Program-made: the position numbers and the translations under genes
Assembly: GCF_947568905.1 (NCBI RefSeq)
Contig: NC_079172.1
Location: 64,976,001-65,040,000, forward strand
Origin: Ostrea edulis
Lineage: Eukaryota
Reading direction: 5' to 3'
Length of the DNA: 64,000 nt
Notes under the pieces: model-generated
Told to the model about the DNA's origin: nothing
Seen by the model: the letters and a program-made list of their open reading frames with translations, nothing else
Databases searched by the model: none
Shown: positions 1 to 64,000 of the stretch, piece after piece
Layout of the letters: each line of letters begins with the position of its first letter
Position numbering within the stretch: position 1 is the stretch's first letter

Positions 1-432
1 TATCATGGGCGTGAAGAGAAGGAAATTATCCAGTTTGAAAGTAAAGAGAAGCCTTTGTATTCAGTTGGTGGCAACTCAAAATACATTTGTGAGAACAGGA
101 ACTTTGATATCTGCGTGGCAGACAGAGATGCGTGCGCAGTGGTGGTGGTCAGTCAAGGTACGAAACTCAGGTTCCGGTATGAAGGAAATCCGTCAAGTTT
201 GCGCAAAACTGAATTCAAACCGAAAGGTATAGCCACCGACAGCCTGAGTAATATTCTTGTTTCAGATCTAGATAATGCTTGTGTCCACGTTGTTGATCAA
301 AACGGAAAGTTTCTTACATTTATAGACTGTCCACGTGTGCGGGCCTGGGGATTGTGCGTCGGTTTGGATAACTACCTGTATGTTGCAGATAATGCATCCG
401 GTGATGTTATAAAGATTCGGTATCTTCAATGA
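1..432 (+). CDS. TRIM-like NHL-repeat protein, copy 0 (3' end only, 5' truncated by window edge)
   Basis: Frame from base 1 reads YHGREEKEIIQFES...GIATDSLSNILVSD...WGLCVGLDNYLYVAD...KIRYLQ*, near-identical to the C-terminal NHL repeats of the complete paralogs. Confidence 0.9.
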   Translation, partial: YHGREEKEIIQFESKEKPLYSVGGNSKYICENRNFDICVADRDACAVVVVSQGTKLRFRYEGNPSSLRKTEFKPKGIATDSLSNILVSDLDNACVHVVDQNGKFLTFIDCPRVRAWGLCVGLDNYLYVADNASGDVIKIRYLQ

Positions 433-1571
433 GGATTTCATAGACCTTGACACAAATGGGAAAGACCAAAATAAAAAGATAGGAATGAAAAATAAAAACA
501 TGTCGTGGCTAAAAGTCGTTGTAATAAAGTACTTTCTACAGTTATATGATGAATTCTAAATACATGTTGTACGTGATTTAATATATATAATAGAAACTCC
601 GTAATATGACGTAATAAATGTTCGACTTCTCCTGGATGTTTGAAACGTCGATGAAATATTGTACGTTTTCGAATTCTTTTCTTGAATGAAGAGAGACTTC
701 AAATTGTTACTATTTTGTGGATTAGAATCGAACTGGCCAATTTGGGAATTCTTTCTATTCGGAAAAAGTCCTTGCAGAGACATGTTTTTCGAAAAGTTGA
801 ACGAATGCAGATTTGGCGTATTTCTGACGTTCAACGGTTGTACACAAGTACTCCAACGAGGTTTTTCCGCGAAAACGCATTGATAGAATTTAAATCATGA
901 TATTTCTATATATAGCATTGTCTGTGTATTTGTGGGGCCAACAAAGTGGTGATCACCGACATGAAAAGGTGAAGATAACGAACAGTGATCAATCTTGTAA
1001 CTTCTATAAAAAATACAGAATTAAGAGTTGGGGAAGCACGGATATCATTTTGATTTCTTAGCGGATTTTCAAAACAGTTAAACATATATACGTTAAAGCA
1101 TATTATATTATTGATAATAAGGAAACAAAAGATACTTCTAGAATCCAAAACCTAAGTGTGAGGATTGAAAGGAATATTATTTTAATGGGACTGATCCACG
1201 ATTTCCATCCCAATTTTCTTTGTTAATTTTAATGAACAAAATCTACTGTCTATTGTGTTTAAAAAGGTTTCACAAAAGTAAGGTTATACATTATCAAAGA
1301 GGCTCATTTTAGAGAATTTATTATTTGTTTTGTAAACAAAGATTGCGAAGTGTTATCACTTACGAAGTCTTTAAAAGAAATAGATATCGATCAAAGTTTA
1401 TTATATATATCACATTTAAGTACTCTAGGTAAATTGTGTCATGTAAAAGGTAAATTTGTGACTGTAAAATTAATTTGCTTTCAACTACAAAATTAGCATT
1501 TAATTAACTTTTAATATCGGGTACTTGAAGTGAGCACCAAACCACTAGGAAGTTGGCACGAACCAAACCAC

Positions 1572-1817
1572 TGACTCAAACTATCCGAGAGTAAATTGGT
1601 ACTCAAAGCATCCGTGAGTAATTGGGACTCAAAACATCCGTGAGTAAATGGGTCTCAAAGCATACGTGAATAAATGAAACTGAAATCATCCGTGAGTATA
1701 TGTGACTAAAAGCATCCTTGAGTAAATGGGATTCAAAACATCTGTGAGTAAAGAGACTCAAATCACCCGTGAGTAAAGGACACAAAGCATCCGTGAGTAA
1801 ATGGCACTCAAAGCATC
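1572..1817. repeat. 26-bp minisatellite (CCGTGAGTAAATGGGACTCAAAACAT-like)
   Basis: Degenerate tandem units read directly; homologous arrays lie downstream of copies A-E. Confidence 0.85.
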
Positions 1818-1998
1818 TTTAAATAAAGGGTTTTTACCACGATTTTTAATGTAATTAAAATCAGGAGTATAACCTTAATAAAGCACGTTTTTGCTTTTAT
1901 ATTGTTTCCTTACTCCCAATAATTGATACAAACATGCATTTTTTCTGCATATATTCAAAGATTCCGCTTTACAAATCTTCACTAATGAGCTACCTAGT

Positions 1999-2026
1999 CA
2001 CGTGGTACGTCATGACGTCATACGTG
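1999..2026. promoter_or_regulatory. Cluster of four ACGT cores including CACGTG (E-box) and TGACGTCA (CRE-like)
   Basis: Sequence CACGTGGTACGTCATGACGTCATACGTG; motif match only, no functional evidence. Identical copy at 19524-19551. Confidence 0.3.
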
Positions 2027-4815: not shown

Positions 4816-4912
4816 CTACCTCTTTAAGAAAGCATTGCCTTTATCATAATACCAACTTCTCTGCCATCGAATGAGGTGCACTTGTGTTGTTTGAAACGGA
4901 TTTTGTCTGTAA

Positions 4913-5115
4913 TAATAATAGTAGGGGTCTATATCATACCACCCCCTTAATGAAAGGTAAAGATAACGAAAAGTGATCAATCTCATAACTCACATAAACA
5001 ATACAAAATAGAGAGTTGGGCAAACACGGTTCCCTGGATATACCAGAGGTGGGATCAGGTAGGGTTATAATAATCTTTTTAGAAGGTGGTATGGTATAGA
5101 CCCCTACTATTATTA
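4913..5115. mobile_element. 31-bp inverted-repeat pair enclosing a minus-strand 3' fragment (4952-5060) of the Penelope-like element
   Basis: Arms TAATAATAGTAGGGGTCTATATCATACCACC (4913-4943) and GGTGGTATGGTATAGACCCCTACTATTATTA (5085-5115); the enclosed sequence is the reverse complement of the 3' end of 57762-58628. Repeated upstream of each gene. Confidence 0.7.
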
Positions 5116-5755
5116 ATTACAAAATAACCGGTTCCTGTCGGCCTAGATGCAGACGACATGATAGACAGTGTCCATACGCCTAACAGATTTACAGTGATTC
5201 GATCCTTGCATTTATCAACAAATATCCTTCAAAATTCTCTCATGCATTAAAGAATAAATGTAAATATTTATATTTTCATTCATGTTTTAAAAGGAAGTCA
5301 GCGATTAGGACGATGTAGAGTACCTCCTTAAATGCAATATACACCGATCGCTTTCTGATTTAAATCACGGGTCACATGCCTGGGATGATATGATATCTTT
5401 TATTGTCGAGGACGGCAGCCATTGTGATAGTTTAGGTAGGACTCTTGATTACGGTAGGGTATCGGCCCTATATACTATATAAGGAAATACAACAGGAGGG
5501 AATGATGATGCGTGCTTGTTACGATCTCTGACATAATCCATCGTGTAGAAAACACAACTTCTGAAATTTAGTTAATTTCAAATGCAATTTACAGCAATTG
5601 CGTCAAGATTTAAAGCATGGATTACCTGCCTTATCTTTTGCTGTTGTGGACGGCCGCCATTGTGAGAGATTAGGTGAGGACTCTAGATTATCATACTTAT
5701 AGAGTGTATAACAAATACAACACACGGAAATAATGATGCGTGTTTGTTTCTATCT

Positions 5756-5774
5756 CTGACGTAATTCATTTCAG
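5756..5774 (+). other. Putative 3' splice site (branch-like CTGAC, then TTTCAG) 15 nt upstream of the ATG
   Basis: CTGACGTAATTCATTTCAG|GAATCTAAAATAAAGATG; conserved before all seven visible start codons. Confidence 0.6.
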
Positions 5775-5789
5775 GAATCTAAAATAAAG

Positions 5790-7409
5790 ATGGACCCTCA
5801 CAACCGAGCCCAGGACGTCCTACACTGTGAATTATGTGAAGAGAATGTGGTACAGATGCACTGTGATACGTGTCTTGTCAAACTGTGTAAGACCTGTGTA
5901 GGAGATCACATCTCATCGGAGGAATGCGAGGATCCCAAAGTCGTTAGATTCCAGTCCAGGAAATCCGCCCCTGTGTATCCAACGTGTGCATTATATGATA
6001 ACAAGTGGTGTGAAATGCACTGCCAGCAGTGCACTGTACCAATCTGTTTCATTTGCGCAACATCTGAAAAACACGCCGGTCATCGATTTAAAAACATTGT
6101 AGACATTTTTGATGAAAAGAAGAGAGCGTTTGAAAAAAAGATAACAGATCTCCAAGAAAATATTCGAGTGAAACACGCGGATCAAGCTTCGAAAATGGAG
6201 AAGCGAATTGTGGATCTAGAAAAGGAATGCACGACACTTCTAGACACTGTGTCTAAACACGGAGAAGAAATGAAAAGAGAAATTGATCAAATTGTTAAGG
6301 AAGTGCAGTCCGAAATTGAGAGTATCAGGAAAAATCACGTGGAACTGTTGACGACAACAAGAACAGAAGTCCAGCAGAATTTGACCGAGATCGACAGGGA
6401 CGTGTCCTCATTAAAAGAAACACTAGACTCTAACGACATTAACAAAGTCTTCCACTTTACACCAAACAACAAGATTTACAAAAATCTATCAGACGATCCC
6501 GTGCTGACGATGCCGGTTTTCTCTACAAAGAGGATCGACTCTGTACAACTCCGTGAAATGTTTGGAACACTGTCCACCGCTATAGCAAAAGTCAGACTGA
6601 TGGAAACACCGCTAATGGTCCATAGAATAGCGACTGGTTATTCTCACCTTTATGGTGTTGCATTTCTAGACAGGATTGGGATATGGGCAACGGGAAATGG
6701 CGATCAAATAAAACTATTTGATATGAATGACAAGTCCACTAAGAAGTCAATCGACACCAAACTGTCAGGCGAAAAACTTGTATCAGTGACAAATCAAGGC
6801 CATCTTCTTTACGCGGAAAAGGGTGGCAGGACGATTCACATTGTTAAACGTGAACAGAGTGAAGAATTGATCAGTCTACATGGCTGGGGAGTTCGCGGCT
6901 TCTGCATCACTTCCGCTGACGATATTCTGGTCGTCATGACAAGTGTAAATAACGGAAGAGAAACTAGAGTTGTTCGATATCATGGGCGTGAAGAGAAGGA
7001 AATTATCCAGTTTGAAAGTAAAGAGAAGCCTTTGTATTCAGTTGGTGGCAACTCAAAATACATTAGTGAGAACAGGAACTTTGATATCTGTGTGGCAGAC
7101 AGAGATGCGTGCGCAGTGGTGGTCTTGAGTCAAGATAGGAAACTCAGGTTCTGGTATAAAGGAAATCCATCAAGTTTGCGCAAAACTGAATTCAAACCGA
7201 AAGGTATAACTACCGACAGCCTGAGTAATATTCTTGTTTCAGATCTAGATAATGCTTGTGTCCACGTTGTTGATCAAAACGGAAAGTTTCTTACATTTAT
7301 AGACTGTCCACGTGTGCAGCCCTGGGGACTGTGCGTCGGTTTGGATAACTACCTGTATGTTGCAGATAATTTATCCAGAGATGTTATAAAGATTCGGTTT
7401 CTTCAATAA
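5790..7409 (+). CDS. TRIM-like protein copy A (B-box1, B-box2, coiled coil, NHL repeats; no RING), 539 aa
   Basis: Uninterrupted ORF with CxxC..CxxC..CxxC..H B-box patterns, a heptad-rich helical segment, and NHL-type motifs (PKGITTDSLSNILVSD, PWGLCVGLDNYLYVAD). Confidence 0.92.
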   Translation: MDPHNRAQDVLHCELCEENVVQMHCDTCLVKLCKTCVGDHISSEECEDPKVVRFQSRKSAPVYPTCALYDNKWCEMHCQQCTVPICFICATSEKHAGHRFKNIVDIFDEKKRAFEKKITDLQENIRVKHADQASKMEKRIVDLEKECTTLLDTVSKHGEEMKREIDQIVKEVQSEIESIRKNHVELLTTTRTEVQQNLTEIDRDVSSLKETLDSNDINKVFHFTPNNKIYKNLSDDPVLTMPVFSTKRIDSVQLREMFGTLSTAIAKVRLMETPLMVHRIATGYSHLYGVAFLDRIGIWATGNGDQIKLFDMNDKSTKKSIDTKLSGEKLVSVTNQGHLLYAEKGGRTIHIVKREQSEELISLHGWGVRGFCITSADDILVVMTSVNNGRETRVVRYHGREEKEIIQFESKEKPLYSVGGNSKYISENRNFDICVADRDACAVVVLSQDRKLRFWYKGNPSSLRKTEFKPKGITTDSLSNILVSDLDNACVHVVDQNGKFLTFIDCPRVQPWGLCVGLDNYLYVADNLSRDVIKIRFLQ

Positions 7410-11686: not shown

Positions 11687-12265
11687 CCATAAGCACAAAG
11701 AAGGTTCTTTATTGCATATTCTTCTCATGTGACGATATAGCCGTACAAATTCCGGTGCCAAAGGGCAAAAGTGTTACAGGTCGGTATTACTGAGATGTTA
11801 TACTAAAAAAGCTGAAGAAATATTATCATAAACGACGCCCTGTGTCAGGATTTAGGCATGCTTGTCTACTTCATGATAATGCTCCATCACATATACATCT
11901 GAGCAATGTTTAAAGTAGGATCTGAGCAATGTTTGAAGTCGGAGAAGGTTATCATCTTGCCACACCCACCATACTCTCCAGATCTAGCCCCATGCGACTT
12001 TTTCCTTTTTCCAAAACTTAACAAGTTCTTATATGGTCGTCGTTACAAGTCCCGACAAGCCCTTGGCTCAGTCATCAGTCAGTGCCTCAGAGGTCTAGCT
12101 AAATCAACGTACCGTGACGCATCTCAGAAATGGATTCCGAGATTGAAATTATGTATTTCAAACCGCGGAGAATACTTTAAAGGGATGTATAGTGTTCATT
12201 TCACTATTTGAGTCGAATGCTTTTGAGATATAGTACAATACACATTACATATCGAACAGCCCTCG
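11687..12265 (+). mobile_element. Right half of the mariner element
   Basis: Matches the 3' half of 26464-27772, includes HPPYSPDLAPCDFFLF and the right TIR ending ...GAACAGCCCTCG followed by TA. Confidence 0.9.
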
Positions 12266-13826: not shown

Positions 13827-14728
13827 TCAAAAGTGTCATATCCTACACTGCAGACAATGTTTCAAGATCATAGAAAATATACTAAAAGATTGTCAATATT
13901 TTACCAACTTGACATATATAACAATAAAGATTGTCAATCTTTCCCCTACATGACATAGATAACATTAAAGATTCTCAATCTTTCCCCTACATGACATAGA
14001 TAACATACTTAAAGATTGTCAATGTTTCCCCTACATGATATAGATAACATTAGAGATTGTCAATGTTTCCCCTACATGACATAGATAACACACTTAAAGA
14101 TTGTCAATGTTTCCCCTACATGACATTGATAATATTAAAGAATGTCAATGTTTCCCCTACATGACATAAATAACATTAAAGATTGTCAATATTTCCCCTA
14201 CATGACAGAGATAACATTAGAGATTGTCAATGTTTCCCCTACATGACATAGATATCATACTTAAAGATTGTCAATGTTTCCCCTACATGACATAGATATT
14301 ATTAAAGAATGTCAATATTTCTCCTACATGACAGAGATAACATTAGAGATTGTCAATGTTTCCCCTACATGACATAGATAATATTAAAGAATGTCAATAT
14401 TTACCTTACATGACATAGATATTATTAAAGATTGTCAATGTTTCCCCTACATTACATAGACAACATTAAAGATTGTCAATATTTCCCCTACATGATATAG
14501 ACAACATTAAAGATTGTCAATATTTCCCCTACATGACATAGATAACATTAGAGATTGTCAATATTTCCCCTACATGACATAGATAACATTAAAGATTGTC
14601 AATGTTTCCCCTACATGACATAGATAACATCCTTGAAGATTGTCCTGTGGAGGAAATATTGACAATCTTTAAGTATGTTATCTATACTCTATCAACATTG
14701 TCTACAGTGTAGAATATGACACTTTTGA
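13827..14728. repeat. 41-bp minisatellite bracketed by ~35-bp inverted arms (foldback-like)
   Basis: Unit TTCCCCTACATGACATAGATAACATTAAAGATTGTCAATGT; arms 13827-13861 and 14694-14728; one inverted unit at ~14647-14685. Confidence 0.85.
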
Positions 14729-16243: not shown

Positions 16244-17873
16244 ATGGACCCTCACAACCGAGCCCAAGACGTTCTACGCTGTGACTGATGTGAAGAGAAT
16301 GTTGTGCAGATGCACTGTGATACGTGTCTTGTCAAGCTGTGTAAGACCTGTGTAGGAGACCACATCTCATCTGAGGAATGCGAGGATCCCAAAGTCGTTA
16401 GATTCCAGTCCAGGAAATGCGTCCCTGTGTATCCAACGTGTGCATTACATGATAACAAGCGGTGTGAAATGCACTGCCAGCAGTGCACTGTACCTGTCTG
16501 TTTCATTTGCGCAACATCTGAAAAACACGCCGGTCATCGATTTAAAAACATTGTAGACATTTTTGATGAAAAGAAGAGAGAGTTTCAAAAAAAAGATAAA
16601 AGATATCCAAGAAAATATTCGAGTGAAACACGCGGATCAAGCTTCGAAAATGGAGAAGCGAATTGCGGATCTAGAAAAGGAAATCACAACACTTATAGAC
16701 ACTGTGTCTAAACACGGAGAACTGAAGAGAAAAATTGATCAAATTGTTAAGGAGGTGCAGTCCGAAATTGAGAGTATTAGGAAAAATCACGTGGAGCTGT
16801 TGATCACAACAAGAACAGAAGTCCAGCAGAATTTGACTGAGATCGACAGGGAAGTGTCCTCATTAAAAGAATTAACACTAGATTCTAACGACATCAATAA
16901 AGTCTTCCACTTTACACCAACCAACAAGATTTACAAAAATCTACCAGACGATCCCGTGCTGACGATGCCGGTTTTCTCTACAAAGAGGATCGACTCTGTA
17001 CAACTCCGTGAAATGTTTGGAACACTGTCCGACATTGTAACAAAACCCACCGCTATAGCAAAAGTCAGACTGATGGAAACACCGCTAATGGTCCATAGAA
17101 TAGCGACTGGTTATTCTCAACTTTATGGTGTTGCATTTCTAGACAGGATGGGAATATGGGCAATAGGAAATGCCCAACAAATAAAACTATTTCATGTGAA
17201 TGACAAGTCCACGAAGAAGTCAATCGACACCAAACTGTCAGGCAAAAAACTTATATTAGTGACAAATCAAGGCCATCTTCTTTACGCGGAAAAGGGTGGC
17301 AGGACGATTCACATTGTTAAACAAGAACAGAGTGAAGAATTGATCAGTTTACAAGGCTGGGGAGTTGTTGGTTTCTGTGTCACTGATGATCTGCTGGTCG
17401 TCATGAGAAGTGATGACAAAAGAGAAACTAGAGTTGTCCGATATCATGGACGTGAAGAGAAGGAAATTATCCAGTTTGAAAGTAAAGGGAAACCTTTCTA
17501 TTCAGTTGGTCCAAACCAAAAGTTGATTTGCGAGAACAGGAACTTTGATATCTGTGTGGCAGACAGAGATGCGTGCGCTGTGGTGGTCGTCAGTCAAGAT
17601 ACGAAATTCAGGTTCCGGTATGAAGGAAATCCGTCAAGTTTGCGCAAAACTGAATTCAAACCGAAAGGTATAGCCACCGACAGCCTGAGTAATATTCTTG
17701 TTTCAGATCTAGATAATGCTTGTGTCCACGTTGTTGATCAAAACGGAAAGTTTATTACAGTTTTAGACTGTCCACGTGTGCAGCCCTGGGGACTGTGCGT
17801 CGGTTTGGATAACTACCTGTATGTTGCAGATAATGCATCGGGTGATGTTATAAAGATTCGGTATCTTCAATGA
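16244..17873 (+). pseudogene. TRIM-like copy B, disrupted
   Basis: ATG at 16244; in-frame TGA at 16286-16288 (TTA in paralogs); A8 at 16587-16594 vs A7 in intact copies (+1 frameshift); otherwise collinear with the paralogs. Confidence 0.85.
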
Positions 17874-22408: not shown

Positions 22409-24043
22409 ATGGACCCTCGCAACCGATCCCAGGACGTCGTACGCTGTGAATTATGTGAAGAGAATGTGGTACAGATGCACTGTGATACGTGTCTTGTCAA
22501 ACTGTGTAAGACCTGTGTAGGAGACCACATCTCATCGGAGGAATGCGAGGATCCCAAAGTCGTTAGATTCCAGTCCAGGAAATCCGTCCCTGTGTATCCA
22601 ATGTGTGCATTACATGATAACAAGCGGTGTGAAATGCACTGCCAGCAGTGCACTGTACCAATCTGTTTCATTTGCGCAACATCTGAGAAACACGCCGGTC
22701 ATCGATTTAAAAACATTGTAGACATTTTTGATGAAAAGAAGAGAGAGTTTGAAAAAAAGATAAAGGATCTCCAAGAAAATATTCGAGTGAAACACGCGGT
22801 TCAAGCTTCGAAAATGGAGAAGCGAATTGCGGATCTAGAAAAGGAATTCACGACACTTCTAGACACTGTGTCTAAACACGGAGAAGAACTGAAGAGAAAA
22901 ATTGATCAAATTGTTATGGAGGTGCAGTCCGAAATTGAGAGTATTCGGAAAAATCACGTGGAGCTGTTGACGGCAACAAGAACAGAAGTCCAGCAGAATT
23001 TGACCGAGATCGACAGGGAAGTGTCCTCATTACAGGAAACACTAGATTCTAACGACATCAATAAAGTCTTCCACTTTACACCAAACAAGAAGATTTACAA
23101 AAATCTATCAGACGATCCTGTGCTGACGATGCCGGTTTTCTCTACAAAGAGGATTGACTTCGTACAACTCCGTGAAATGTTTGGAACACTGTCCAACATT
23201 GTAACCAAGCCCACCGCTATAGCAAAAGTCAGACTGATGGAAACACCGGTAATAGTCCATAGAATAGCGACTGGTTATTCTCAACTTTATGGTGTTGCAT
23301 TTCTAGACAGGATTGGGATATGGGCAACAGGAGATGCCCAACAAATAAAACTATTTGATGTGAATGACAAGTCCATAAAGAAGTCAATCGACACCAAACT
23401 GTCAGGCGATCAACTTATATCATTGACAACTCAAGGCCATCTTCTTTACGCGGAGAGGGATGACAAGACGATTTACATTGTTAAACGTGAACAGAGTGAA
23501 GAATTGATCAGTCTACAAGGCTGGGAAGTTGTTGGTTTCTGTGTCACTTCCGCTGACGATCTGCTGGTCGTCATGACAAGTGATGACAAAAGAGAAACTA
23601 GAGTTGTCCGATATCATGGACGTGTAGAGAAGGAAATTATCCAATTTGAAAGTAAAAGGAAACCTTTCTATTCAGTTGGTCCAAACCAAACGTTGATTTG
23701 CGAGAACAGGAACTTTGATATCTGTGTGGCAGACAGAGATGCGTGCGCAGTGGTGGTCGTGAGTCAAGATACGAAACTCAGGTTCCGGTATAAAGGAAAT
23801 CCACCAAGTTTGCGTTTAAATGAATTCAGACCGAAAGGCATAACCACCGACATCCTGTGTAATATCCTTGTTTCAGATATGTATAATGCTTGTGTCCACG
23901 TTGTTGATCAAAGCGGAAAGTTTCTTACATTTATAGACTGTCCACGTGTGGAGCCCTGGGGACTGTGTGTCGGTTTGGATAACTATCTGTATGTTGCAGA
24001 TACTGCATCTAGTGATGTTATAAAGATTCTGTTTCTTCAATAA
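22409..24043 (+). CDS. TRIM-like protein copy C, 544 aa
   Basis: Intact ORF with the same B-box/coiled-coil/NHL architecture. Confidence 0.92.
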   Translation: MDPRNRSQDVVRCELCEENVVQMHCDTCLVKLCKTCVGDHISSEECEDPKVVRFQSRKSVPVYPMCALHDNKRCEMHCQQCTVPICFICATSEKHAGHRFKNIVDIFDEKKREFEKKIKDLQENIRVKHAVQASKMEKRIADLEKEFTTLLDTVSKHGEELKRKIDQIVMEVQSEIESIRKNHVELLTATRTEVQQNLTEIDREVSSLQETLDSNDINKVFHFTPNKKIYKNLSDDPVLTMPVFSTKRIDFVQLREMFGTLSNIVTKPTAIAKVRLMETPVIVHRIATGYSQLYGVAFLDRIGIWATGDAQQIKLFDVNDKSIKKSIDTKLSGDQLISLTTQGHLLYAERDDKTIYIVKREQSEELISLQGWEVVGFCVTSADDLLVVMTSDDKRETRVVRYHGRVEKEIIQFESKRKPFYSVGPNQTLICENRNFDICVADRDACAVVVVSQDTKLRFRYKGNPPSLRLNEFRPKGITTDILCNILVSDMYNACVHVVDQSGKFLTFIDCPRVEPWGLCVGLDNYLYVADTASSDVIKILFLQ

Positions 24044-33918: not shown

Positions 33919-35538
33919 ATGGACCCTCACAACCGAGCCCAGGACGTCCTACGCTGTGACTTATGTGAAGAGAATGTGGTGCAGATGCACTGTGATACGT
34001 GTCTTGTCAAGCTGTGTAAGACCTGTGTAGGAGACCACATCTCATCTGATGAACGCGAGGATCACAAAGTCGTTAGATTCCAGTTCAGGAAATGCATCCC
34101 TGTGTATCCAACGTGTGCATTACATGATAGTAAGCGGTGTGAAATGCACTGCCAGCAGTGCACGGTACCAATCTGTTTCATTTGCGCAACATCTGAGAAA
34201 CATGTTGGCCACAGGTTTAGAAACATTGTAGATATTTTTGATGAAAAGAAGAGAGAGTTTGAAAAAAAGATAAAAGATATCCAAGAAGATATTCGAGTGA
34301 AACACGCGGATCAAGCTTCGAAAATGGAGAAGCGAATTGCGGATCTAGAAAAGGAATGCACGGCACTTCTAGACACTGTGTCTAAACACGGAGAAGAACT
34401 GAAAAGAGAAATTGATCAAATTGTTAAGGAGGTGCAGTCCGAAATTGAGAGTATTAGGAAAAATCACGTGGAACTGTTGACGACAACAAGAACAGAAGTC
34501 CAGCAGAATTTGACCGAGATCGACAGGGAAGTGTCCTCATTAAAAGAAACACTAGACTCTAACGACATTAACAAAGTCTTCCACTTTACACCAAACAACA
34601 AGATTTACAAAAATCTATCAGACGATCCTGTGCTGACGATGCCGGTTTTCTCTACAAAGAGGATCGACTCTGTACAACTCCGTGAAATGTTTGGAACACT
34701 GTCCACCGCTATAGCAAAAGTCAGACTGATGGAAACACCGCTAATGGTCCATAGAATAACGACTGGTTATTCTGACCTTTATGGTGTTGCATTTCTAGAC
34801 AGGATTAGAATATGGGCAACAGGAGATGCCCAACAAATAAAATTATTTGATGTGAATGACAATTCCATAAAGAAGTCAATCGACACCAAACTGTCAGGCG
34901 AAAAACTTGTATCAGTGACAAATCAAGGCCATCTTCTTTACGCGGAAAAGGGTGACAGGACGATTTACATTGTTAAACGTGAACAGAGTGAAAAATTGAT
35001 CAGTCTATTTGGCTGGGGAGTTCACGGCTTCTGCATCACTTCCGCTGACGACCTTCTGGTCGTCATGAGAAGTGTAAATAACGGAAAAGAAACTAGAGTT
35101 GTCCGATATCATGGACGTGAAGAGAAGGAAATTATCCAGTTTGAAAGTAAAGGGAAGCCTTTGTATTCAGTTGGTAGCAACTCAAAATACATTTGTGAGA
35201 ACAGGAACTTTGATATCTGTGTGGCAGACAGAGATGCGTGCGCAGTGGTGGTCGTGAGTCAAGATACGAAACTCAGGTTCCGGTATAAAGGAAATCCATC
35301 AAGTTTGCGCAAAACTGAATTCAAACCGAAAGGTATAACTACCGACAACCTGAGTAATATTCTTGTTTCAGATCTAGATAATGCTTGTGTCCACATTGTT
35401 GATCAAAACGGAAAGTTTCTTACATTTATTGACTGTCCACGTGTGCAGCCCTGGGGATTGTGCGTCGGTTTGGATAACTACGTGTATGTTGCAGATAATT
35501 TATCCAGAGATGTTATAAAGATTCGGTTTCTTCAATAA
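33919..35538 (+). CDS. TRIM-like protein copy D, 539 aa
   Basis: Intact ORF; B-box1 retains the terminal His (GDH-x8-H). Confidence 0.92.
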   Translation: MDPHNRAQDVLRCDLCEENVVQMHCDTCLVKLCKTCVGDHISSDEREDHKVVRFQFRKCIPVYPTCALHDSKRCEMHCQQCTVPICFICATSEKHVGHRFRNIVDIFDEKKREFEKKIKDIQEDIRVKHADQASKMEKRIADLEKECTALLDTVSKHGEELKREIDQIVKEVQSEIESIRKNHVELLTTTRTEVQQNLTEIDREVSSLKETLDSNDINKVFHFTPNNKIYKNLSDDPVLTMPVFSTKRIDSVQLREMFGTLSTAIAKVRLMETPLMVHRITTGYSDLYGVAFLDRIRIWATGDAQQIKLFDVNDNSIKKSIDTKLSGEKLVSVTNQGHLLYAEKGDRTIYIVKREQSEKLISLFGWGVHGFCITSADDLLVVMRSVNNGKETRVVRYHGREEKEIIQFESKGKPLYSVGSNSKYICENRNFDICVADRDACAVVVVSQDTKLRFRYKGNPSSLRKTEFKPKGITTDNLSNILVSDLDNACVHIVDQNGKFLTFIDCPRVQPWGLCVGLDNYVYVADNLSRDVIKIRFLQ

Positions 35539-36726: not shown

Positions 36727-36728
<2 letters not shown>

Positions 36729-41129: not shown

Positions 41130-41157
41130 AGTGCCTGTAGGGGAAATATTGAAAATC

Positions 41158-43443: not shown

Positions 43444-45078
43444 ATGGACCCTCACAACCGAACCCAGGACGTCCTACACTGTGAATTATGTGAAGAGAAT
43501 GTGGTACAGATGCACTGTGATACGTGTCTTGTCAAGCTGTGTAAGACCTGTGTAGGAGACCACATCTCATCGGAGGAATGCGAGGATCCCAAAGTCGTTA
43601 GATTCCAGTCCAGGAAATCCGCCCCTGTGTATCCAACGTGTGCATTGCATGATAACAAGCGGTGTGAAATGCACTGCCAGCAGTGCACTGTACCAATCTG
43701 TTTCATTTGCGCAACATCTGAGAAACACGCCGGTCATAGATTTAAAAACATTGTAGACATTTTTGATGAAAAGAAGAGAGAGTTTGAAAAAAAGATAAAA
43801 GATCTCCAAGAAAATATTCGAGTGAAACGCGCGGATCAAGCTTCGAAAATGGAGAAGCGAATTGCGGATCTAGAAAAGGAATTCACGACACTTCTAGACA
43901 CTGTGTCTAAACACGGAGAAGAACTGAAGAGAAAAATTGATCAAATTGTTATGGAGGTGCAGTCCGAAATTGAGAGTATTAGGAAAAATCACGTGGAGCT
44001 GTTGACGGCAACAAGAACAGAAGTCCAGCAGAATTTGACCGAACTCGACAGGGAAGTGTCCTCATTAAAGGAAACACTAGATTCTAACGACATCAACAAA
44101 GTCTTCCATTTTACACCAAAGAACAAGATTTACAAAAATCTATCAGACGATCCCGTGCTGACGATGCCGGTTTTCTCTACAAAGAGGATCGACTCCGTAC
44201 AACTCCGTGAAATGTTTGGAACACTGTCCAACATTGTAACCAAACCCACCGCTATAGCAAAAGTCAGACTGATGGAAACACCGCTAATGGTCCATAGAAT
44301 AGCAACTGGTTATTCTCAACTTTATGGTGTTGCATTTCTAGACAGGATTGGGATATGGGCAACAGGAGATGCCCAACAAATAAAACTATTTGATGTGAAT
44401 GACAAGTCCATAAAGAAGTCAATCGACACCAAACTGTCAGGCGATCAACTTATATCAGTGACAACTCAAGGTCATCTTCTTTACGCGGAGAGGAAAGGCA
44501 AGACGATTTAAATTGTTAAACGTGAACAGAGTGAAGAATTGATCAGTCTACAAGGCTGGGGAGTTGTTGGTTTCTGTGTCATTTCCGTTGACGATCTGCT
44601 GGTCGTCATGACAAGTGATGACAAAAGAGAAACTAGAGTTGTCCGACATCATGGGCGTGAAGAGAAGGAAATTATCCAATTTGAAAGTAAAGGGAAACCT
44701 CTCTATTCAGTTGGTCCAAACCAAAAGTTCATTTGCGAGAACAGGAACTTTGATATCTGTGTGGCAGACAGAGATGCGTGCGCAGTAGTGATCGTGAGTC
44801 AAGATATGAAACTCAGGTTCCGGTATAAAGGAAATCCATCAAGTTTGCGTTTAAATGAATTCAGACCGAAAGGCATAACCACCGACATCCTGTGTAATAT
44901 CCTTGTTTCAGATATGTATAATGCTTGTGTCCACGTTGTTGATCAAAACGGAAAGTTTCTCACATTTATAAACTGTCCACGTGTGGAGCCCTGGGGACTG
45001 TGCGTCGGTTTGGATAACTATCTGTATGTTGCAGATACTGCATCTAGTAATGTTATAAAGATTCGGTTTCTTCAATAA
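43444..45078 (+). pseudogene. TRIM-like copy E with a single premature stop (355-aa truncated product or pseudogene)
   Basis: TAA at 44509-44511 where paralogs have TAC/CAC; the downstream frame stays open to the normal stop at 45078. Confidence 0.8.
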
Positions 45079-47991: not shown

Positions 47992-48174
47992 ATGATGATG
48001 ATAATAGTGTCCTTTACTTATAAAGGATAGCACAATTAGTTCAGCAGAAACATATAGGTCTCAGAACTAGTTCACATGGTGGTTCTGATCAGATACATAT
48101 AGTCAGCAGCATTATGAAGATACAATAATCAGTATATGAAGTTATGTTACATACATACGCTATCTGCATACATA

Positions 48175-51033: not shown

Positions 51034-51061
51034 AGTGCCTGTAGGGGAAATATTGAAAATC

Positions 51062-51675
51062 TCAAAAGTGTCATATCCTACACTGCAGACAATGTTTCAA
51101 GATCATAGATAATATACTAAAAGATTGTCAATATTTCCCCAACTTGACATATATAACATTAAAGATTGTCAATCTTTCCCCTACATGAAATAGATAACAT
51201 TAAAGATTCTCAATTTTTCCCCTACATGACATAGATAACATACTTAAAGATTGTCAATGTTTCCCCTACATGACATATATAGCATTAAAGATTGTCAATA
51301 TTTCCCCTACACGACATAGATAACATTAAAGAATGTCAATATTTCCCTTACATGACATAGATAACATTAGAGATTGTCAATGTTTCCCCTACATGACATA
51401 GATAGCATACTAAACGATTCTCAATGTTTCCCCTACATGACATAGATAATATTAAAGAATATCAGTATTTCCCCTACATGACATAGATAACATTACAGAT
51501 TGTCAATTTTCCCCTACATGACATAGATAACATTCTTGAAGATTGTCAATATTTCCCCTACATGACATAGATAACATACTTGAAGATAGTCCTGTGGAGG
51601 AAATATTGAGAATCTTTAAGTATGTTATCTATACTCTAGCAACATTGTCTACAGTGCAGGATATGACACTTTTGA
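51062..51675. repeat. 41-bp minisatellite with inverted arms
   Basis: Shortest homolog of 13827-14728. Confidence 0.85.
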
Positions 51676-53191: not shown

Positions 53192-54814
53192 ATGGACCCT
53201 CACAACCGAGCCCAAGACGTCCTACGCTGTGAATTATGTGAAGAGAATGTGGTACAGATGCACTGTGATACGTGTCTTGTCAAGCTGTGTAAGACCTGTG
53301 TAGGAGACCACATCTCATCGGAGGAATGCGAGGATCCCAAAGTCGTTAGATTCCAGTCCAGGAAATCCGCCCCTGTGTATCCAACGTGTACATTACATGA
53401 TAACAAGCGGTGTGAAATGCACTGCCAGCAGTGCACTGTACCAATCTGTTTCATTTGCGCAACATCTGAAAAACACGCCGGTCATCGATTTAAAAACATT
53501 GTAGACATTTTTGATGATAAGAAGAGAGCGTTTGAAAAAAAGATAACAGATCTCCAAGAAAATATTCGAGTGAAACACGCGGATCAAGCTTCGAAAATGG
53601 AGAAGCGAATTGCGGATCTAGAAAAGGAATGCACGGCACTTCTAGACACTGTGTCTAAACACGGAGAAGAACTGAAAAGAGAAATTGATCAAATTGTTAA
53701 GGAGGTGCAGTCCGAAATTGAGAGTATTAGGAAAAATCACGTGGAACTGTTGACGACAACAAGAACAGAAGTCCAGCAGAATTTGACCGAGATCGACAGG
53801 GAAGTGTCCTCATTAAAAGAAACACTAGACTCTAACGACATTAACAAAGTCTTCCACTTCACACCAAACAACAAGATTTACAAAAGTCTATCAGACGATC
53901 CCGTGCTGACGATGCCGGTTTTCTCTACAAAGAGGATCGACTCTGTACAACTCCGTGAAATGTTTGGAACACTGTCCACCGCTATAGCAAAAGTCAGACT
54001 GATGGAAACACCGCTAATGGTCCATAGAATAGCGACTGGTTATTCTCAACTTTATGGTGTTGCATTTCTAGACAGGATTGGGATATGGGCAACGGGAAAT
54101 GGCGATCAAATAAAACTATTGGATGTGAATGACAAGTCCACTAAGAAGTCAATCGACACCAAACTGTCAGTCGAAAAACTTGTATCAGTGACAAATCAAG
54201 GCCATCTTCTTTACGCGGGAAAGGGTGGCAAGGCGATTCACATTGTTAAACGTGAACAGAATGAAGAATTGATCAGTCTACATGGCTGGGGAGTTCGCGG
54301 TTTCTGCATCACTTCTGCTGGCGATCTTCTGATCGTCATGACAAGTGTTAATGATTACGGAAGAGAAACTAGAGTTGTCCGATATCATGGACGTGAAGAG
54401 AAGGAAATTATCCAATTTGAAAGTAAAGGGAAACCTCTCTATTCAGTTGGTCCAAACCAAAAGTGCATTTGCGAGAACAGGAACTTTGATATCTGTGTGG
54501 CAGACAGAGATGCGTGCGCAGTGGTGGTTGTCAGTCAAGATACGAAATTCAGATTCAGGTATAAAGGAAATCCGTCAAGTTTGCGCAAAACTGAATTCAG
54601 ACCGAAAGGGATAACCACCGACATCCTGAGTAATATTCTTGTTTCAGATTTAGGTAATGCTTGTGTCCACGTTGTTGATCAAAACGGAAAGTTTCTTACA
54701 GTTATAAACTGTCCACGTGTGGATCCCCGGGGACTGTGCGTCGGTTTGGATAACTACCTGTATGTCGCAGATTATGCATCCGGTGATGTTATTAAGATTC
54801 GGTTTCTTCAATAA
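53192..54814 (+). CDS. TRIM-like protein copy F, 540 aa
   Basis: Intact ORF with the same architecture. Confidence 0.92.
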   Translation: MDPHNRAQDVLRCELCEENVVQMHCDTCLVKLCKTCVGDHISSEECEDPKVVRFQSRKSAPVYPTCTLHDNKRCEMHCQQCTVPICFICATSEKHAGHRFKNIVDIFDDKKRAFEKKITDLQENIRVKHADQASKMEKRIADLEKECTALLDTVSKHGEELKREIDQIVKEVQSEIESIRKNHVELLTTTRTEVQQNLTEIDREVSSLKETLDSNDINKVFHFTPNNKIYKSLSDDPVLTMPVFSTKRIDSVQLREMFGTLSTAIAKVRLMETPLMVHRIATGYSQLYGVAFLDRIGIWATGNGDQIKLLDVNDKSTKKSIDTKLSVEKLVSVTNQGHLLYAGKGGKAIHIVKREQNEELISLHGWGVRGFCITSAGDLLIVMTSVNDYGRETRVVRYHGREEKEIIQFESKGKPLYSVGPNQKCICENRNFDICVADRDACAVVVVSQDTKFRFRYKGNPSSLRKTEFRPKGITTDILSNILVSDLGNACVHVVDQNGKFLTVINCPRVDPRGLCVGLDNYLYVADYASGDVIKIRFLQ

Positions 54815-59211: not shown

Positions 59212-60673
59212 GAAATGAATAGACAAGCATTGCTGATAGTTAAGAAATGAATAGACAAGCATTGCTGATAGTTAAGCAATGAATAGAAATGAATAGACAA
59301 GCATTGCTGATAGTTAAGCAATGAATAGAAATGAATAGACAAGCATTGCTGATAGTTAAGAAATGAATAGACAAGCATTGCTGATAGTTAAGCAATGAAT
59401 AGACAAGCATTGCTGATAGTTAAGCAATGAATAGAAATGAATAGACAAGCATTGCTGATAGTTAAGCAATGAATAGAAATGAATAGACAAGCATTGCTGA
59501 TAGTTAAGAAATGAATAGACAAGCATTGCTGATAGTTAAGCAATGAATAGACAAGCATTGCTGATAGTTAAGAAATGAATAGACAAGCATTGCTGATAGT
59601 TAAGAAATGAATAGACAAGCATTGCTGATAGTTAAGAAATGAATAGACAAGCATTGCTGATAGTTAAGAAATGAATAGACAAGCATTGCTGATAGTTAAG
59701 CAATGAATAGAAATGAATAGACAAGCATTGCTGATAGTTAAGCAATGAATAGAAATGAATAGACAAGCATTGCTGATAGTTAAGCAATGAATAGAAATGA
59801 ATAGACAAGCATTGCTGATAGTTAAGCAATGAATAGAAATGAATAGACAAGCATTGCTGATAGTTAAGAAATGAATAGACAAGCATTGCTGATAGTTAAG
59901 AAATGAATAGACAAGCATTGCTGATAGTTAAGAAATGAATAGACAAGTATTGCTGATAGTTAAGAAATGAATAGACAAGTATTGCTGATAGTTAAGAAAT
60001 GAATAGACAAGCATTGCTGATAGTTAAGAAATGAATAGACAAGCATTGCTGATAGTTAAGAAATGAATAGACAAGTATTGCTGATAGTTAAGAAATGAAT
60101 AGACAAGCATTACTGATAGTTAAGAAATGAATAGACAAGCATTGCTGATAGTTAAGAAATGAATAGACAAGTATTGCTGATAGTTAAGAAATGAATAGAC
60201 AAGTATTGCTGATAGTTAAGAAATGAATAGACAAGCATTGCTGATAGTTAAGCAATGAATAGACAAGCATTGCTGATAGTTAAGAAATGAATAGACAAGC
60301 ATTGCTGATAGTTAAGAAATGAATAGACAAGCATTGCTGATAGTTAAGAAATGAATAGACAAGCATTGCTGATAGTTAAGAAATGAATAGACAAGCATTG
60401 CTGATAGTTAAGTGAATAGACAAGCATTGCTGATAGTTAAGCAATGAATAGACAAGCATTGCTGATAGTTAAGAAATGAATAGACAAGCATTGCTGATAG
60501 TTAAGCAATGAATAGACAAGCATTGCTGATAGTTAAGCAATGAATAGACAAGCATTGCTGATAGTTAAGCAATGAATAGACAAGCATTGCTGATAGTTAA
60601 GAAATGAATAGACAAGCATTGCTGATAGTTAAGCAATGAATAGACAAGCATTGCTGATAGTTAAGCAATGAAT
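59212..60673. repeat. 32-bp VNTR, ~44 units, some with a 9-bp internal duplication
   Basis: Read directly; homolog of 30776-31496. Confidence 0.95.
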
Positions 60674-60681
60674 TATCATTT

Positions 60682-62001
60682 TTAGCTCTTATTATTTTGA
60701 GCTTTTCTGATCACCCGTAGTCCGGAGTCCGTCCGTCTGTAAACTTTTAACATGAGCTTTTCTGATCACCCGTAGTCCGGAGTCCGTCCGTCTGTAAACT
60801 TTTAACATGTTTGACTTCTTCTCATAAACCACTGGGCCAATTTCAACCAATGTTGGCACAAAGTATCCTTAGGTAAAGGGAATTCTAAATTGTTAAAATA
60901 AAGGGCAAGGCCTTCCAAGGAGAGATAATCAAGAAAAGGTAAAAAAAAGAGTAGGGTCATCAAAAAATCGTCTTCTCAAGAACCACTGGGCCAGAAAAGA
61001 TGAAATATATAGATAAGCTTTATTAGGTAGTGCAGATTCAAGTTTGTTAAAATCATGGCCCCGGGGGTCGGATGCCACAAGGGGGATCAAAGTTTTAGAT
61101 ACAAATATATAGGGAAAATCTTTAAAAATCTTCCTCTCAAGAACCACTAAGCCAGAAAAGCTGAGATTTATATGAAAACTTCCTGATATAATGCAAATTC
61201 AAGTTTGCTAAAATCATGGCCCCCGGGGGTAGGATGGGGCCAGAAGGGGGATCAAAGTTTTACATACAAAAATATTGGAAAAATATTTAAAAATCTTCTT
61301 CTCAAGAACCACTGATACAGAAAAGATGAGATTTATATGAAAGCTTTCTGATATAGTGCAAATTCAGGTGTGTTAAAATCATGGTCCCCGGGAGTCGGAT
61401 GGGGCCACAATAGGGGATCAAAGTTTTACATACAAATATAAAGGGACAATCTTTAAAAATCTTCTCAAGAACCATTGAGCCAGAGAAGCTGATATTTACA
61501 TGAAGGCTTCCTGATATAGTGCAGATTCAAGTCTGTTAAAAGCATGGCCTCCGGGGGTCGGATGGGGCCACAATAGGGGATCAAATTTTACAAACAAATA
61601 TATAGGGACAATCTTTAAAAATCTTCTTCCCAAGAACCACTGAGGTAGAAAAGCTGATATTTACATGAAAGCTTCCTAACATAGTGCAGAGTTAAGTTTG
61701 TTCAAATCATGGCCCCTTGGAGTAGGATGGGGCCACAATTGGGGATCAAAGTTTTACATACAAATATATAGGAAAAATCTTTAAAAATCTTCTTCTCACG
61801 AACCATTGGGCCAAAGAAGTTCATATTTACATGAAAGCTTTCTGACATTGTGTAGATTCAAGTTTGCAAAAACCATGGCCTCAAGGGGTAGGTTTGGGTC
61901 CATAATAGGGACTATGGTTTTACATGCAAATATATATGGAAAGTCCTCTGATATGAACCAAGGTGACTCAGGTGAGCGATGTGGCCAATGGGCCTCTTGT
62001 T
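60682..62001 (+). mobile_element. HINE with ~165-bp satellite units, second copy
   Basis: Near-identical to 31507-32772, plus a 55-bp tandem duplication at 60699-60808. Confidence 0.8.
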
Positions 62002-63148
62002 TGAAAGATGTAATCTCATAACTGCAACGGTGTGTGCATACAAATTAAATAACGCGCATTGAGAAAATTAACTAAATTTGTTTGCATACACCGTTGCAGT
62101 TATGAGACTACCTCTTAAAAACCATTGCCTCTATCATAAGATCAACTTCTCTGCCATCGAATGAGGTGCAGTTGTGTTGTTTGAGACGGGAATGGATAAC
62201 AAACATTTGTTTTCATTCTGCATGCGTGCACCGAGCACAGGAACTGGTGATTTTGTCTGTAGTAATAATAATAGTAGAGGTCTATATCATACCGCCCCCT
62301 TAATGAAAGGTAAAGATAACGAAAAGTGATCAATCTCATAACTCACATAGACAATACAAAATAGAGAGTTGGGCAAACACGGTTCCCTGAATATACCAGA
62401 GGTTGGATCAGGTAGGGTTATAATAATCATTTTAGAAGGTGGTATGGTATAGACCCCTACTATTATTAATTACAAAATAACTGGTTCCTGTCGGCTAATT
62501 GCAGACGACATGATAGACATTGTTCATATGCCTTACATATTTACAGTGATTCGATCCTTGCATTTATCAACAAATATCCTTCAAAATTCTCTCATGCATT
62601 TTATTTCAGGATTAAAGAATAAATAAAAATATTTATATTTTCATTCATGTTTTAAAAGGAAGTAAGCGATTAGGACGACGTAGAGTACTCTACACCGATC
62701 GCTTTCTGATTTAAATCACGGGTCACATGCCTGGGATGATATGATATCGTTCATTGTCGAGGACGGCAGCCATAGTGATAGTGCAGGTGAGGACTCTTGA
62801 TCAGTGTATTGGACCTATATACTATACAAGGAAATACAACAGGAGGGAATGCTGATGCGCGCTTGTTACGATCTCTGACATAATCCATTGTGTAGAAAAC
62901 ACAACTTCTGAAATTCAGTTCATTTTATATTCATTCTACACCAATCGCGTTAAGATTTAAAGCACGGATTATCTGCCTTGGATCATATGATATCTTTTGT
63001 TGATGTGGACGGCCGCCATTGTGATAGATTAGGTGAGGACTCTAGATCATCATACTCAAAGAGTGTATAGCAAAGACAACACACGGAAGTAATAATACGT
63101 GTTTGTTTCGATCTCTGACGTAATTCATTTCAGGAATCTAAAGTAAAG

Positions 63149-64000
63149 ATGGACCCTCACAACCGAGCCCAGGACGTCCTACGCTGTGACTTATGTGAAG
63201 AGAATGTGGTGCAGATGCACTGTGATACGTGTCTTGTCAAGCTGTGTAAGACCTGTGTAGGAGACCACATCTCATCTGATGAACGCGAGGATCACAAAGT
63301 CGTTAGATTCCAGTTCAGGAAATGCATCCCTGTGTATCCAACGTGTGCATTACATGATAGCAAGCGGTGTGAAATGCACTGCCAGCAGTGCACGGTACCA
63401 ATCTGTTTCATTTGCGCAACATCTGAGAAACATGTTGGCCACAGGTTTAGAAAAATTGTAGATATTTTTGATGAAAAGAAGAGAGAGTTTGAAAAAAAGA
63501 TAAAAGATATCCAAGAAAATATTCGAGTGAAACACGCGGATCAAGCTTCGAAAATGGAGAAGCGAATTGCGGATATAGAAAAGGAATTCACGATACTTCT
63601 AGACACTGTGTCTAAACACGGAGAAGAACTGAAAAGAGAAATTGATCAAATTGTTAAGGAGATGCAGTCCGAAATTAAGAGTATCAGGAAAAATCACATG
63701 GAACTGTTGACCACAAGAAAAACAGAAGTCCAGCAGAATTTGACCGAGATCGACAAGGAAGTGTCCTCATTAAAAGAAAGACTAGACTCTAACGACATTA
63801 ACAAAGTCTTCCATTTTACACCAAACAACAAGATTTACAAAAGTCTATCAGACGATCCCGTGCTGACGATGCCGGTTTTCTCTACAAAGAGGATTGACTC
63901 CGTACAACTCCGTGAAATGTTTGGAACACTTTCCGACATCGTAACAAAACCCACCGCTATAACAAAAGTCAGACTGATGGAAACACCGCTAATGGTCCAT
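63149..64000 (+). CDS. TRIM-like protein copy G (5' part, runs off the window)
   Basis: ATG at 63149, MDPHNRAQDVLRCDLC...; the frame ends in register at ...PLMVH at the window edge; missing from the ORF track because no stop is reached. Confidence 0.88.
   Translation, partial: MDPHNRAQDVLRCDLCEENVVQMHCDTCLVKLCKTCVGDHISSDEREDHKVVRFQFRKCIPVYPTCALHDSKRCEMHCQQCTVPICFICATSEKHVGHRFRKIVDIFDEKKREFEKKIKDIQENIRVKHADQASKMEKRIADIEKEFTILLDTVSKHGEELKREIDQIVKEMQSEIKSIRKNHMELLTTRKTEVQQNLTEIDKEVSSLKERLDSNDINKVFHFTPNNKIYKSLSDDPVLTMPVFSTKRIDSVQLREMFGTLSDIVTKPTAITKVRLMETPLMVH

What the first reader, a model, noticed from the sequence alone, without database searches (positions are those of the whole stretch)
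1..64000. Tandem array of at least 8 RING-less TRIM-NHL genes with variation concentrated in short propeller segments
Seen: B-box and coiled-coil regions are nearly invariant, while radical substitutions cluster at recurring short NHL positions: GNGDQ/GNAQQ/GDAQQ; GEKLVSV/GKKLILV/GDQLISL; EKGGR/ERDDK/ERKGK/GKGGK; LHGWGVR/LQGWEVV/LFGWGVH; SVNNG/SDDK/SVNDYG; GGNSKY/GPNQKL/GPNQTL/GSNSKY/GPNQKF/GPNQKC; DLDN/DMYN/DLGN; VQPW/VEPW/VRAW/VDPR; DNLSR/DNASG/DTASS/DYASG. Established: NHL propellers of Brat and LIN-41/TRIM71 bind RNA on one face, and TRIM-like families are expanded in bivalves. Inference: this is a birth-and-death receptor array diversifying its ligand surface, possibly an innate-immune or nucleic-acid recognition repertoire.
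Basis: partly seen in the sequence, partly recalled or inferred. Interest (0 to 1): 0.72.

Follow-up and report, generated by a model that had tools for sequence, protein, structure and literature searches.

The report
Oyster TRIM-like NHL gene array
An oyster chromosome carries eight tandem copies (six intact, two broken) of a RING-less B-box/coiled-coil/NHL-propeller gene that differ most in the loops on the propeller's ligand-binding face; this is a typical oyster gene-family expansion, with modest evidence of adaptive diversification and no expression or ligand data.

Summary
The cluster holds exactly eight close copies (86-100% protein identity), all on the + strand and 6-11.5 kb apart. 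It runs from 1.2 kb before the window to 0.8 kb after it. Six ORFs are intact and two are broken.

Each copy encodes two B-boxes, a long coiled coil and a six-bladed NHL propeller closest to TRIM2/TRIM3. There is no RING. The next relatives in the genome are only about 40% identical, and that family has over 1,400 candidate hits.

Replacement change there is about 2.4 times that in strands or bottom loops, while silent change is equal. Class-wise omega is 1.3 for top loops, against 0.66, 0.64 and 0.44 elsewhere.

The B-box and coiled coil are not "nearly invariant": 19-25% of their residues vary.

The copies are mosaics, so naive site tests are inflated (LRT 40.6). After segmenting, a modest signal remains (LRT 8-9, p about 0.01-0.02).

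Nonsense changes are far too few for dead genes. Expression, ligand and any immune role are untested.

The scan reported the same pattern for another array in this genome.

The parts
1..432 (+). c1: last 143 codons plus the stop codon of copy 1. The full intact 545-aa ORF starts 1.2 kb before the window (L004:1501-3135).
4899..5789 (+). Upstream block shared by the units (about 5% mean pairwise divergence). An acceptor-like pyrimidine tract ending in CAG lies 18 nt before the ATG, so a 5'UTR intron is likely.
5790..7409 (+). c2: intact 539-aa ORF. B-box 1 is at residues 13-51, B-box 2 at 64-103, the coiled coil at 103-214, and the NHL propeller at 270-539 (nt 6597-7406). It carries H69Y at a B-box 2 position held by His in nearly all relatives.
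16244..17873 (+). c3ps: pseudogene with a stop at codon 15 and a 1-nt insertion at nt 343. It also has three in-frame indels.
22409..24043 (+). c4: intact 544-aa ORF.
33919..35538 (+). c5: intact 539-aa ORF. Its 5' flank and N-terminal half are 98% identical to c8 up to the start of the NHL-coding part.
43444..45078 (+). c6ps: a single in-frame TAA after 355 codons; otherwise full length.
53192..54814 (+). c7: intact 540-aa ORF.
63149..64000 (+). c8: first 284 codons. The intact 546-aa ORF continues 0.8 kb past the window (L006:1501-3138).
13885..14630 (.). 41-bp minisatellite that recurs in the spacers (also 29373-30332, 41216-41845, 51120-51577, 56776-57761). It is a possible substrate for unequal crossing-over.

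Best explanation
This is a young tandem cluster inside the very large oyster family of RING-less, Brat-type "incomplete TRIM" proteins (B-box 1, B-box 2, coiled coil, NHL propeller). No close ortholog turned up in other oysters. Each gene has a single coding exon.

Shown:
- The cluster grew by whole-unit tandem duplication.
- Recombination or gene conversion keeps reshuffling it, so each copy carries its own combination of nine loop patches.
- Selection has kept most ORFs open and has constrained the B-boxes, coiled coil, linker, strands and bottom loops.
- The top-face loops (b-c and d-a) change at or above the neutral rate.

Inferred:
- The proteins dimerise through the coiled coil.
- They use the NHL top face to bind a variable ligand, which could be protein or RNA.
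- Lacking a RING, they act as adaptors or sequestering factors, or they work together with RING-bearing relatives.
- The array is therefore a diversifying recognition repertoire, comparable to fish finTRIMs. An immune role is plausible from the oyster literature but is not shown for these genes.
For: - Array size and domains.
- Units are about 90% identical through their spacers.
- Mosaic structure: parsimony length falls from 399 to 373, 359 and 347 with 1, 2 and 4 breakpoints. Shuffled site orders give 394.5, 390 and 382.
- ORF maintenance: about 17 nonsense changes are expected at the neutral rate and 2 are seen (P about 8e-6). Six of seven CDS indels are in frame, against 5 of 17 in the flanks.
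- Constraint on the scaffold: omega is 0.44 for the N-terminal half, 0.66 for strands and 0.64 for bottom loops.
- Top loops: omega is 1.30, higher than strands (p=2e-4) and bottom loops (p=0.003).
- Diversity at codon positions 1+2 in top loops is 0.129, against 0.074 at fourfold sites (p=0.005) and 0.060 in the flanks (p=5e-5).
- Site models with segment-specific trees:
  - M1a/M2a gives LRT 8.9 (p=0.012).
  - M8a/M8 gives p=0.002.
  - The six intact copies alone give LRT 17.8.
  - About 2-4% of sites have omega of about 5-6.
- Best candidate sites are 286, 369, 420, 424 and 510 (also 389 and 412). All are in top loops or at the start of strand a.
- Independent data: in 19 paralogues at about 40% identity, top-loop entropy is 1.12 bits against 0.53 for strands and bottom loops (p=2e-4 and 0.008).
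- The definition of the top surface, and its RNA-binding role in Brat, come from PMC4015489.
- TRIM2/3-like transcripts track disease tolerance in C. virginica (PMC9892467).
Against: - Top-loop omega is not significantly above 1 (p=0.14). NG86 gives about 1.0.
- No single site reaches posterior 0.95 with all eight copies.
- The naive site test is strongly inflated by recombination (LRT 40.6 with one tree). Residual micro-conversion or multi-nucleotide changes (CGC/GTT, GGC/CCA) could explain the remaining LRT of 8-9.
- About 58% of codons fall in the omega=1 class.
- Two copies are dead, and c2 has lost a B-box 2 His.
- There is no expression evidence. The only RNA-labelled runs hold 5-9% of the sampled words, read laying failed, and each protein is on record only on the genome contig.
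- The face assignment rests on AF2 topology (pLDDT about 85 in the propeller), not on coordinates.
Confidence: 0.55

Rival explanations
1. Relaxed constraint only. The copies are young, redundant duplicates drifting toward loss. Surface loops simply tolerate change, and nothing is being adaptively diversified.
For: - Overall omega is 0.46-0.65, and about 58% of codons fall in a neutral class.
- Top-loop omega is not significantly above 1.
- Two of eight copies are pseudogenes, and c2 carries H69Y.
- No expression evidence was obtained.
Against: - There is a strong deficit of nonsense and frameshift changes.
- Bottom loops are equally exposed but change 2.4 times less at replacement positions.
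- Top-loop replacement positions exceed fourfold and flank diversity.
- M2a and M8 remain significant after segmentation.
Confidence: 0.33
2. Housekeeping or developmental post-transcriptional regulators of the Brat, TRIM2/3 or LIN-41 type. The copies are dosage duplicates that bind one conserved RNA or protein partner.
For: - The domain order is the same as Brat, including the missing RING (PMC4015489).
- The closest structures are the TRIM2/TRIM3 NHL domains.
- The top loops are mildly net positive (+1 to +5) and the bottom loops negative.
Against: - A conserved partner predicts a conserved top face. Here the top face is the most variable part.
- No ortholog above 43% identity was found in other oysters.
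- The family has more than 1,400 candidate loci in this genome.
Confidence: 0.07
3. Assembly artefact: uncollapsed haplotypes or a mis-expanded repeat rather than a real eight-gene array.
For: DNA runs of the same species hold only 0.35-0.73 of the sampled words of unit 2.
Against: - The copies differ by 5-13% and have different spacers: a hAT insertion only in unit 2, different satellite lengths, and unit lengths of 6.2-11.5 kb.
- The order is a head-to-tail series on one chromosome-scale contig.
Confidence: 0.03

Closest known systems
Fish finTRIM genes (PMC2657112)
   Same: A large lineage-specific TRIM expansion in tandem clusters. Variation and positive selection are focused on the loops of the C-terminal ligand-binding domain.
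   Different: finTRIMs have a RING and a B30.2/SPRY domain, and they have expression and induction data. The oyster genes lack a RING, use an NHL propeller, and have only a modest selection signal.
Drosophila Brat, an "incomplete TRIM"-NHL protein (PMC4015489; PDB 1q7f, 4zlr)
   Same: Same architecture without a RING: B-boxes, coiled coil and a six-bladed NHL domain. The functional face is the top surface made by the b-c and d-a loops. Charge polarity is the same (top positive, bottom negative).
   Different: Brat is a single-copy, conserved developmental regulator with a conserved RNA-binding face. NHL identity is only about 15%, and Brat has no tandem expansion.
Vertebrate TRIM2/TRIM3 NHL domains (PDB 7qrv, 7b96, 7qrw)
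   Same: Closest solved structures (phmmer E 1e-16; Foldseek TM 0.78).
   Different: TRIM2/3 have a RING and a filamin domain, are single-copy and are neuronal. Their NHL ligand mode is itself unclear (PMC5908797).
Oyster and bivalve TRIM-like / B-box expansions (PMC8382680, PMC9892467; RefSeq "TRIM2/3/55/71-like" models)
   Same: Same family, same start motif and same length of about 560 aa. These genes are expanded in bivalves and are often reported as responsive in disease studies.
   Different: This cluster sits on a long branch (43% identity or less to any database protein). Face-specific variation has not, as far as my searches show, been described for these genes.

Membership tests
TRIM (RBCC) family | N-terminal RING finger | tested here: not met
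   There is no Pfam RING hit and no RING pattern in any frame of the window. Homologues start at the same Met. An acceptor-like site 18 nt before the ATG leaves room only for a non-coding upstream exon, but no transcript data were available.
TRIM (RBCC) family | One or two B-box zinc fingers | tested here: met
   PF00643 matches two stretches (E 1e-10 to 3e-6). The Cys/His ligands are invariant in the 25-member alignment.
TRIM (RBCC) family | Coiled coil after the B-boxes | tested here: met
   AF2 predicts a continuous helix over residues 103-214. There are weak sequence matches to the TRIM5 and TRIM72 B-box/coiled-coil regions.
TRIM-NHL subgroup (Brat-type incomplete TRIM) | C-terminal six-bladed NHL propeller | tested here: met
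   phmmer matches the TRIM2/3 NHL domains at 1e-16. The AF2 model has 24 strands, and Foldseek gives TM 0.78 to 7b96/7qrv.
RNA-binding NHL domains (Brat, LIN-41) | Electropositive top surface and conserved RNA-contact residues | tested here: inconclusive
   Top loops carry a net charge of +1 to +5 and bottom loops -2 to -4. No coordinates or contact mapping were available. TRIM2/3-type NHLs show no conservation of either known RNA surface (PMC5908797).
Birth-and-death multigene array | Tandem duplicates together with pseudogenes | tested here: met
   Eight head-to-tail units, two of them pseudogenes.
Diversifying (positively selected) receptor repertoire | dN/dS above 1 on ligand-face sites, robust to recombination | tested here: inconclusive
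   Class omega is 1.30 (p=0.14 against 1). The M2a LRT is 7.9-9.2 after segmentation and 17.8 for the intact copies. Top-loop diversity exceeds fourfold diversity (p=0.005).
Innate-immune effector or sensor | Expression in immune tissues or induction by a pathogen | not tested
RNA runs hold only 5-9% of the sampled words.

The most novel reading that the evidence does not exclude
The array is one module of a family of more than a thousand cytosolic recognition proteins in oysters. In this reading, specificity is generated combinatorially: gene conversion shuffles a small set of alternative top-face loop cassettes among RING-less NHL propellers. That would make it an invertebrate NHL-based counterpart of finTRIM/TRIM5-type restriction factors, acting by sequestration or through RING-bearing partners.
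Probability: 0.25. Interest if true: 0.65.

Novelty: new member of a known kind. Interest (0 to 1): 0.42.

Why it matters
Oysters lack adaptive immunity and carry huge expansions of TRIM-like genes that keep appearing in disease-resistance transcriptomes. What these proteins recognise is unknown.

Here the variable positions all lie on the NHL top face. The scaffold and the reading frames are under constraint. Loop variants are reshuffled between copies. Together these points give a concrete, testable picture of a recognition repertoire and name the residues to mutate.

The work also shows a method caveat: about three quarters of the naive positive-selection signal in such arrays comes from recombination.

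Tried and rejected
- **Read laying.** So there is no transcript start, splice or expression evidence.
- **Run search.** It found only small word shares in RNA-labelled runs, which is not interpretable.
- **NG86 dN/dS.** It understates omega here because kappa is about 3.3. I replaced it with ML codon models of my own, with branch lengths fixed from M0. These are not PAML or HyPhy.
- **Single-tree site test.** Rejected as inflated (LRT 40.6).
- **Clustering along the sequence.** Lag-1 autocorrelation of replacement change was not significant (p=0.09). The clustering is structural, by face, rather than linear.
- **Radical substitutions.** Top-loop differences change charge more often (48% against 30-33%) but are not more radical by BLOSUM62 than bottom-loop ones.
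The 18 nt before the ATG here are nearly invariant but are not a canonical GAAANNGAAA site. They are no better conserved than the surrounding 200 nt.
- **Literature searches.** None found a description of NHL-face selection in bivalve TRIM-like genes.
- **No model coordinates.** The tools gave no coordinates for the AF2 model, so faces were assigned by strand topology using the definition in PMC4015489.
Full report
**What is there**

tblastn and blastn with the 539-aa ORF at 5790-7409 find nine hits on the + strand. These are seven full-length copies, plus one copy cut at each window end.

The whole-genome search places the window at G000:C9:64976001-65040000. It shows exactly eight close loci between C9:64974795 and 65040786. 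The two end copies were completed from L004 and L006, and both are intact.

- Gene starts are 6.2-11.5 kb apart.
- Six ORFs are intact (539-546 aa).
- c3ps (16244-17873) has a stop at codon 15 and a 1-nt insertion in an A-run.
- c6ps (43444-45078) has one in-frame TAA.
- The next best loci in the genome are only 38-41% identical, and the first look counted 1,428 candidates.
- The best proteins in the public collection are Saccostrea, Ostrea, Magallana and Crassostrea models at 43% identity or less. They are named TRIM2/3/55/71-like or uncharacterized.

So this is an oyster. Earlier notes of this scan call it a flat oyster. The cluster is a young burst on a long branch of a very large family.

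**Domains**

- Pfam finds two B-box stretches, plus weak NHL and propeller hits.
- phmmer against PDB matches the TRIM3 and TRIM2 NHL domains at about 1e-16.
- An AF2 model built on 25 family members gives B-box folds and one long helix over residues 103-214. It also gives 24 strands over residues 270-538, with pLDDT of about 85 there.
- Foldseek ranks the TRIM2/TRIM3 NHL domains first (TM 0.78), followed by Thin, LIN-41, Brat and Mei-P26.
- No RING pattern exists in any frame of the window. RefSeq homologues from four oyster genera begin with the same N-terminal motif.

The architecture is therefore that of Brat, which the literature calls an "incomplete" TRIM because it lacks the RING (PMC4015489).

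All eight copies have a pyrimidine tract ending in CAG 18 nt before the ATG. Distant paralogues have an equivalent site 16-33 nt before theirs. I read the genes as having a single coding exon and probably a 5'UTR intron. This is inference, because I had no transcripts.

**Where the variation lies**

I assigned the 24 strands to blades using three cues:
- the NHL motif, in which the small-residue "P.G.." strand is strand a;
- the long inter-blade connections;
- the 3+1 closure of the ring.

PMC4015489 states that the b-c and d-a loops form the top surface by definition, and that this is Brat's RNA-binding platform.

| Structural class | Nonsyn. differences per codon | Syn. differences per codon | ML omega |
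|---|---|---|---|
| Top loops | 0.296 | 0.086 | 1.30 |
| Strands | 0.122 | 0.088 | 0.66 |
| Bottom loops | 0.124 | 0.037 | 0.64 |
| N-terminal half | 0.04-0.09 | 0.05-0.08 | 0.44 |

- Top loops exceed strands (permutation p=5e-5) and bottom loops (p=0.002) in replacement change.
- In the fixed-sites ML codon model, top differs from strands (p=2e-4) and from bottom loops (p=0.003). It does not differ from 1 (p=0.14).
- Diversity at codon positions 1+2 in top loops (0.129) exceeds fourfold sites (0.074, p=0.005) and 1.2 kb of aligned flanks (0.060, p=5e-5).
- An independent set of 19 paralogues at about 40% identity shows the same asymmetry: entropy of 1.12 bits in top loops against 0.53 in both strands and bottom loops.

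19-25% of those residues vary.

**Recombination and site tests**

Nearest neighbours change along the gene. For example, c5 and c8 are 98% identical over 3.2 kb up to the start of the NHL-coding part and then diverge.

An exhaustive-parsimony breakpoint search lowers tree length from 399 to 373, 359 and 347 with 1, 2 and 4 breakpoints. Shuffled site orders give 394.5, 390 and 382.

Site models with one tree give an M1a/M2a LRT of 40.6. With segment-specific trees the results are:

| Breakpoints | LRT |
|---|---|
| 2 | 12.6 |
| 4 | 8.9 (p=0.012) |
| 7 | 9.2 |
| 10 | 7.9 (p=0.019) |

- M8a against M8 gives p=0.002.
- The six intact copies alone give LRT 17.8.
- About 2-4% of codons get omega of about 5-6.
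- The best sites are 369, 286, 424, 510, 420, 389 and 412, in or next to top loops. Sites 147 and 149 in the coiled coil also score.
- None reaches posterior 0.95 with all eight copies.
- Several of these sites involve two or three changes within one codon, a known source of false positives.

I rate the evidence for positive selection as modest.

**Are the genes alive?**

- At the neutral rate implied by the trees, about 17 nonsense changes are expected and 2 are seen (P about 8e-6). Halving the expectation still gives about 0.01.
- Six of seven coding indels are multiples of three, against 5 of 17 in the flanks.
- The N-terminal half, linker and strands have significantly fewer replacement changes than neutrality predicts.

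So the ORFs have been translated and selected for most of their history. Direct expression evidence is missing:
- The run search found only 5-9% of sampled words in RNA-labelled runs.
- Each protein is on record only on the genome contig.

**Mechanism**

Shown:
- tandem duplication of whole units;
- recombination or gene conversion that gives each copy a unique combination of loop variants;
- a constrained scaffold;
- a fast-changing top face.

Inferred:
- dimerisation through the coiled coil;
- ligand binding on the NHL top face;
- no intrinsic E3 ligase activity, so adaptor, sequestering or partner-dependent action.

The immune reading rests on literature for related oyster TRIM-like genes (PMC9892467, PMC8382680) and on analogy with finTRIMs (PMC2657112), not on data for this array. 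The main rival is relaxed constraint on redundant duplicates. What argues against it is the contrast between top and bottom loops, together with the excess over neutral proxies.

**Relation to earlier notes of this scan**

Note s1-279263 reports the same pattern for a seven-gene, RING-bearing array elsewhere in this genome. I reached the same reading independently on this array.

Note s1-301806 reports an IRF-type site just before the ATG of another array. Here the 18 nt before the ATG are almost invariant, but they are not a canonical site and are no better conserved than their surroundings.

**Verdict**

It is a member of a known, expanded oyster family. Face-specific variation is clear, adaptive diversification is plausible but only modestly supported, and function is untested.

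Noticed in passing
window 9853-11761 (-): A decayed hAT-type transposase split into three ORFs (hAT dimerisation domain and DUF4371 hits). It is present only in the spacer after c2 and appears to be inserted into the mariner-like element seen in other spacers.
   Followed up: partly
window 26859-27239, 38673-39053, 48572-48952 (+): The same 126-aa ORF with a winged-helix hit (mariner-like N-terminus) recurs in three spacers, so it was duplicated along with the units.
   Followed up: partly
window 13885-14630, 29373-30332, 41216-41845, 51120-51577, 56776-57761; 30817-31496 and 59212-60673; 31734-32713 and 60963-61942; 19026-19341, 25655-25922, 36823-37236, 46706-47129: Four minisatellite families (41, 32, 165 and 26 bp) recur at matching places in the spacers with different copy numbers. 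They are likely substrates for unequal crossing-over.
   Followed up: partly
window 31523-34752 vs 60753-64000; 36695-41674 vs 46585-51577: Two blocks of about 98% identity lie inside an array that is otherwise about 90% identical. The first block ends at codon 278 of c5/c8, at the start of the NHL domain, so a recent exchange has its breakpoint at the domain boundary.
   Followed up: partly
c5 (34054-34065) and c8 vs the other copies, residues 46-49: A coupled change at the end of B-box 1. Six copies have Cys46 with Pro49. c5 and c8 have Arg46 with His49, and His is the family consensus at that position. This looks like a swap of the last zinc ligand.
   Followed up: no
c2, residues 69 and 73 (window 5994-6008): c2 alone has Tyr in place of the near-invariant B-box 2 His69, and Trp in place of Arg73. 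This "intact" copy may have a weakened zinc site.
   Followed up: no
window 5752-5789 and the same place before each copy: A CRE-like octamer (TGACGTAA) lies 31-38 nt before the ATG, just upstream of the acceptor-like site. It is invariant except for one base in c4.
   Followed up: no
They were left out of all later searches.
   Followed up: no
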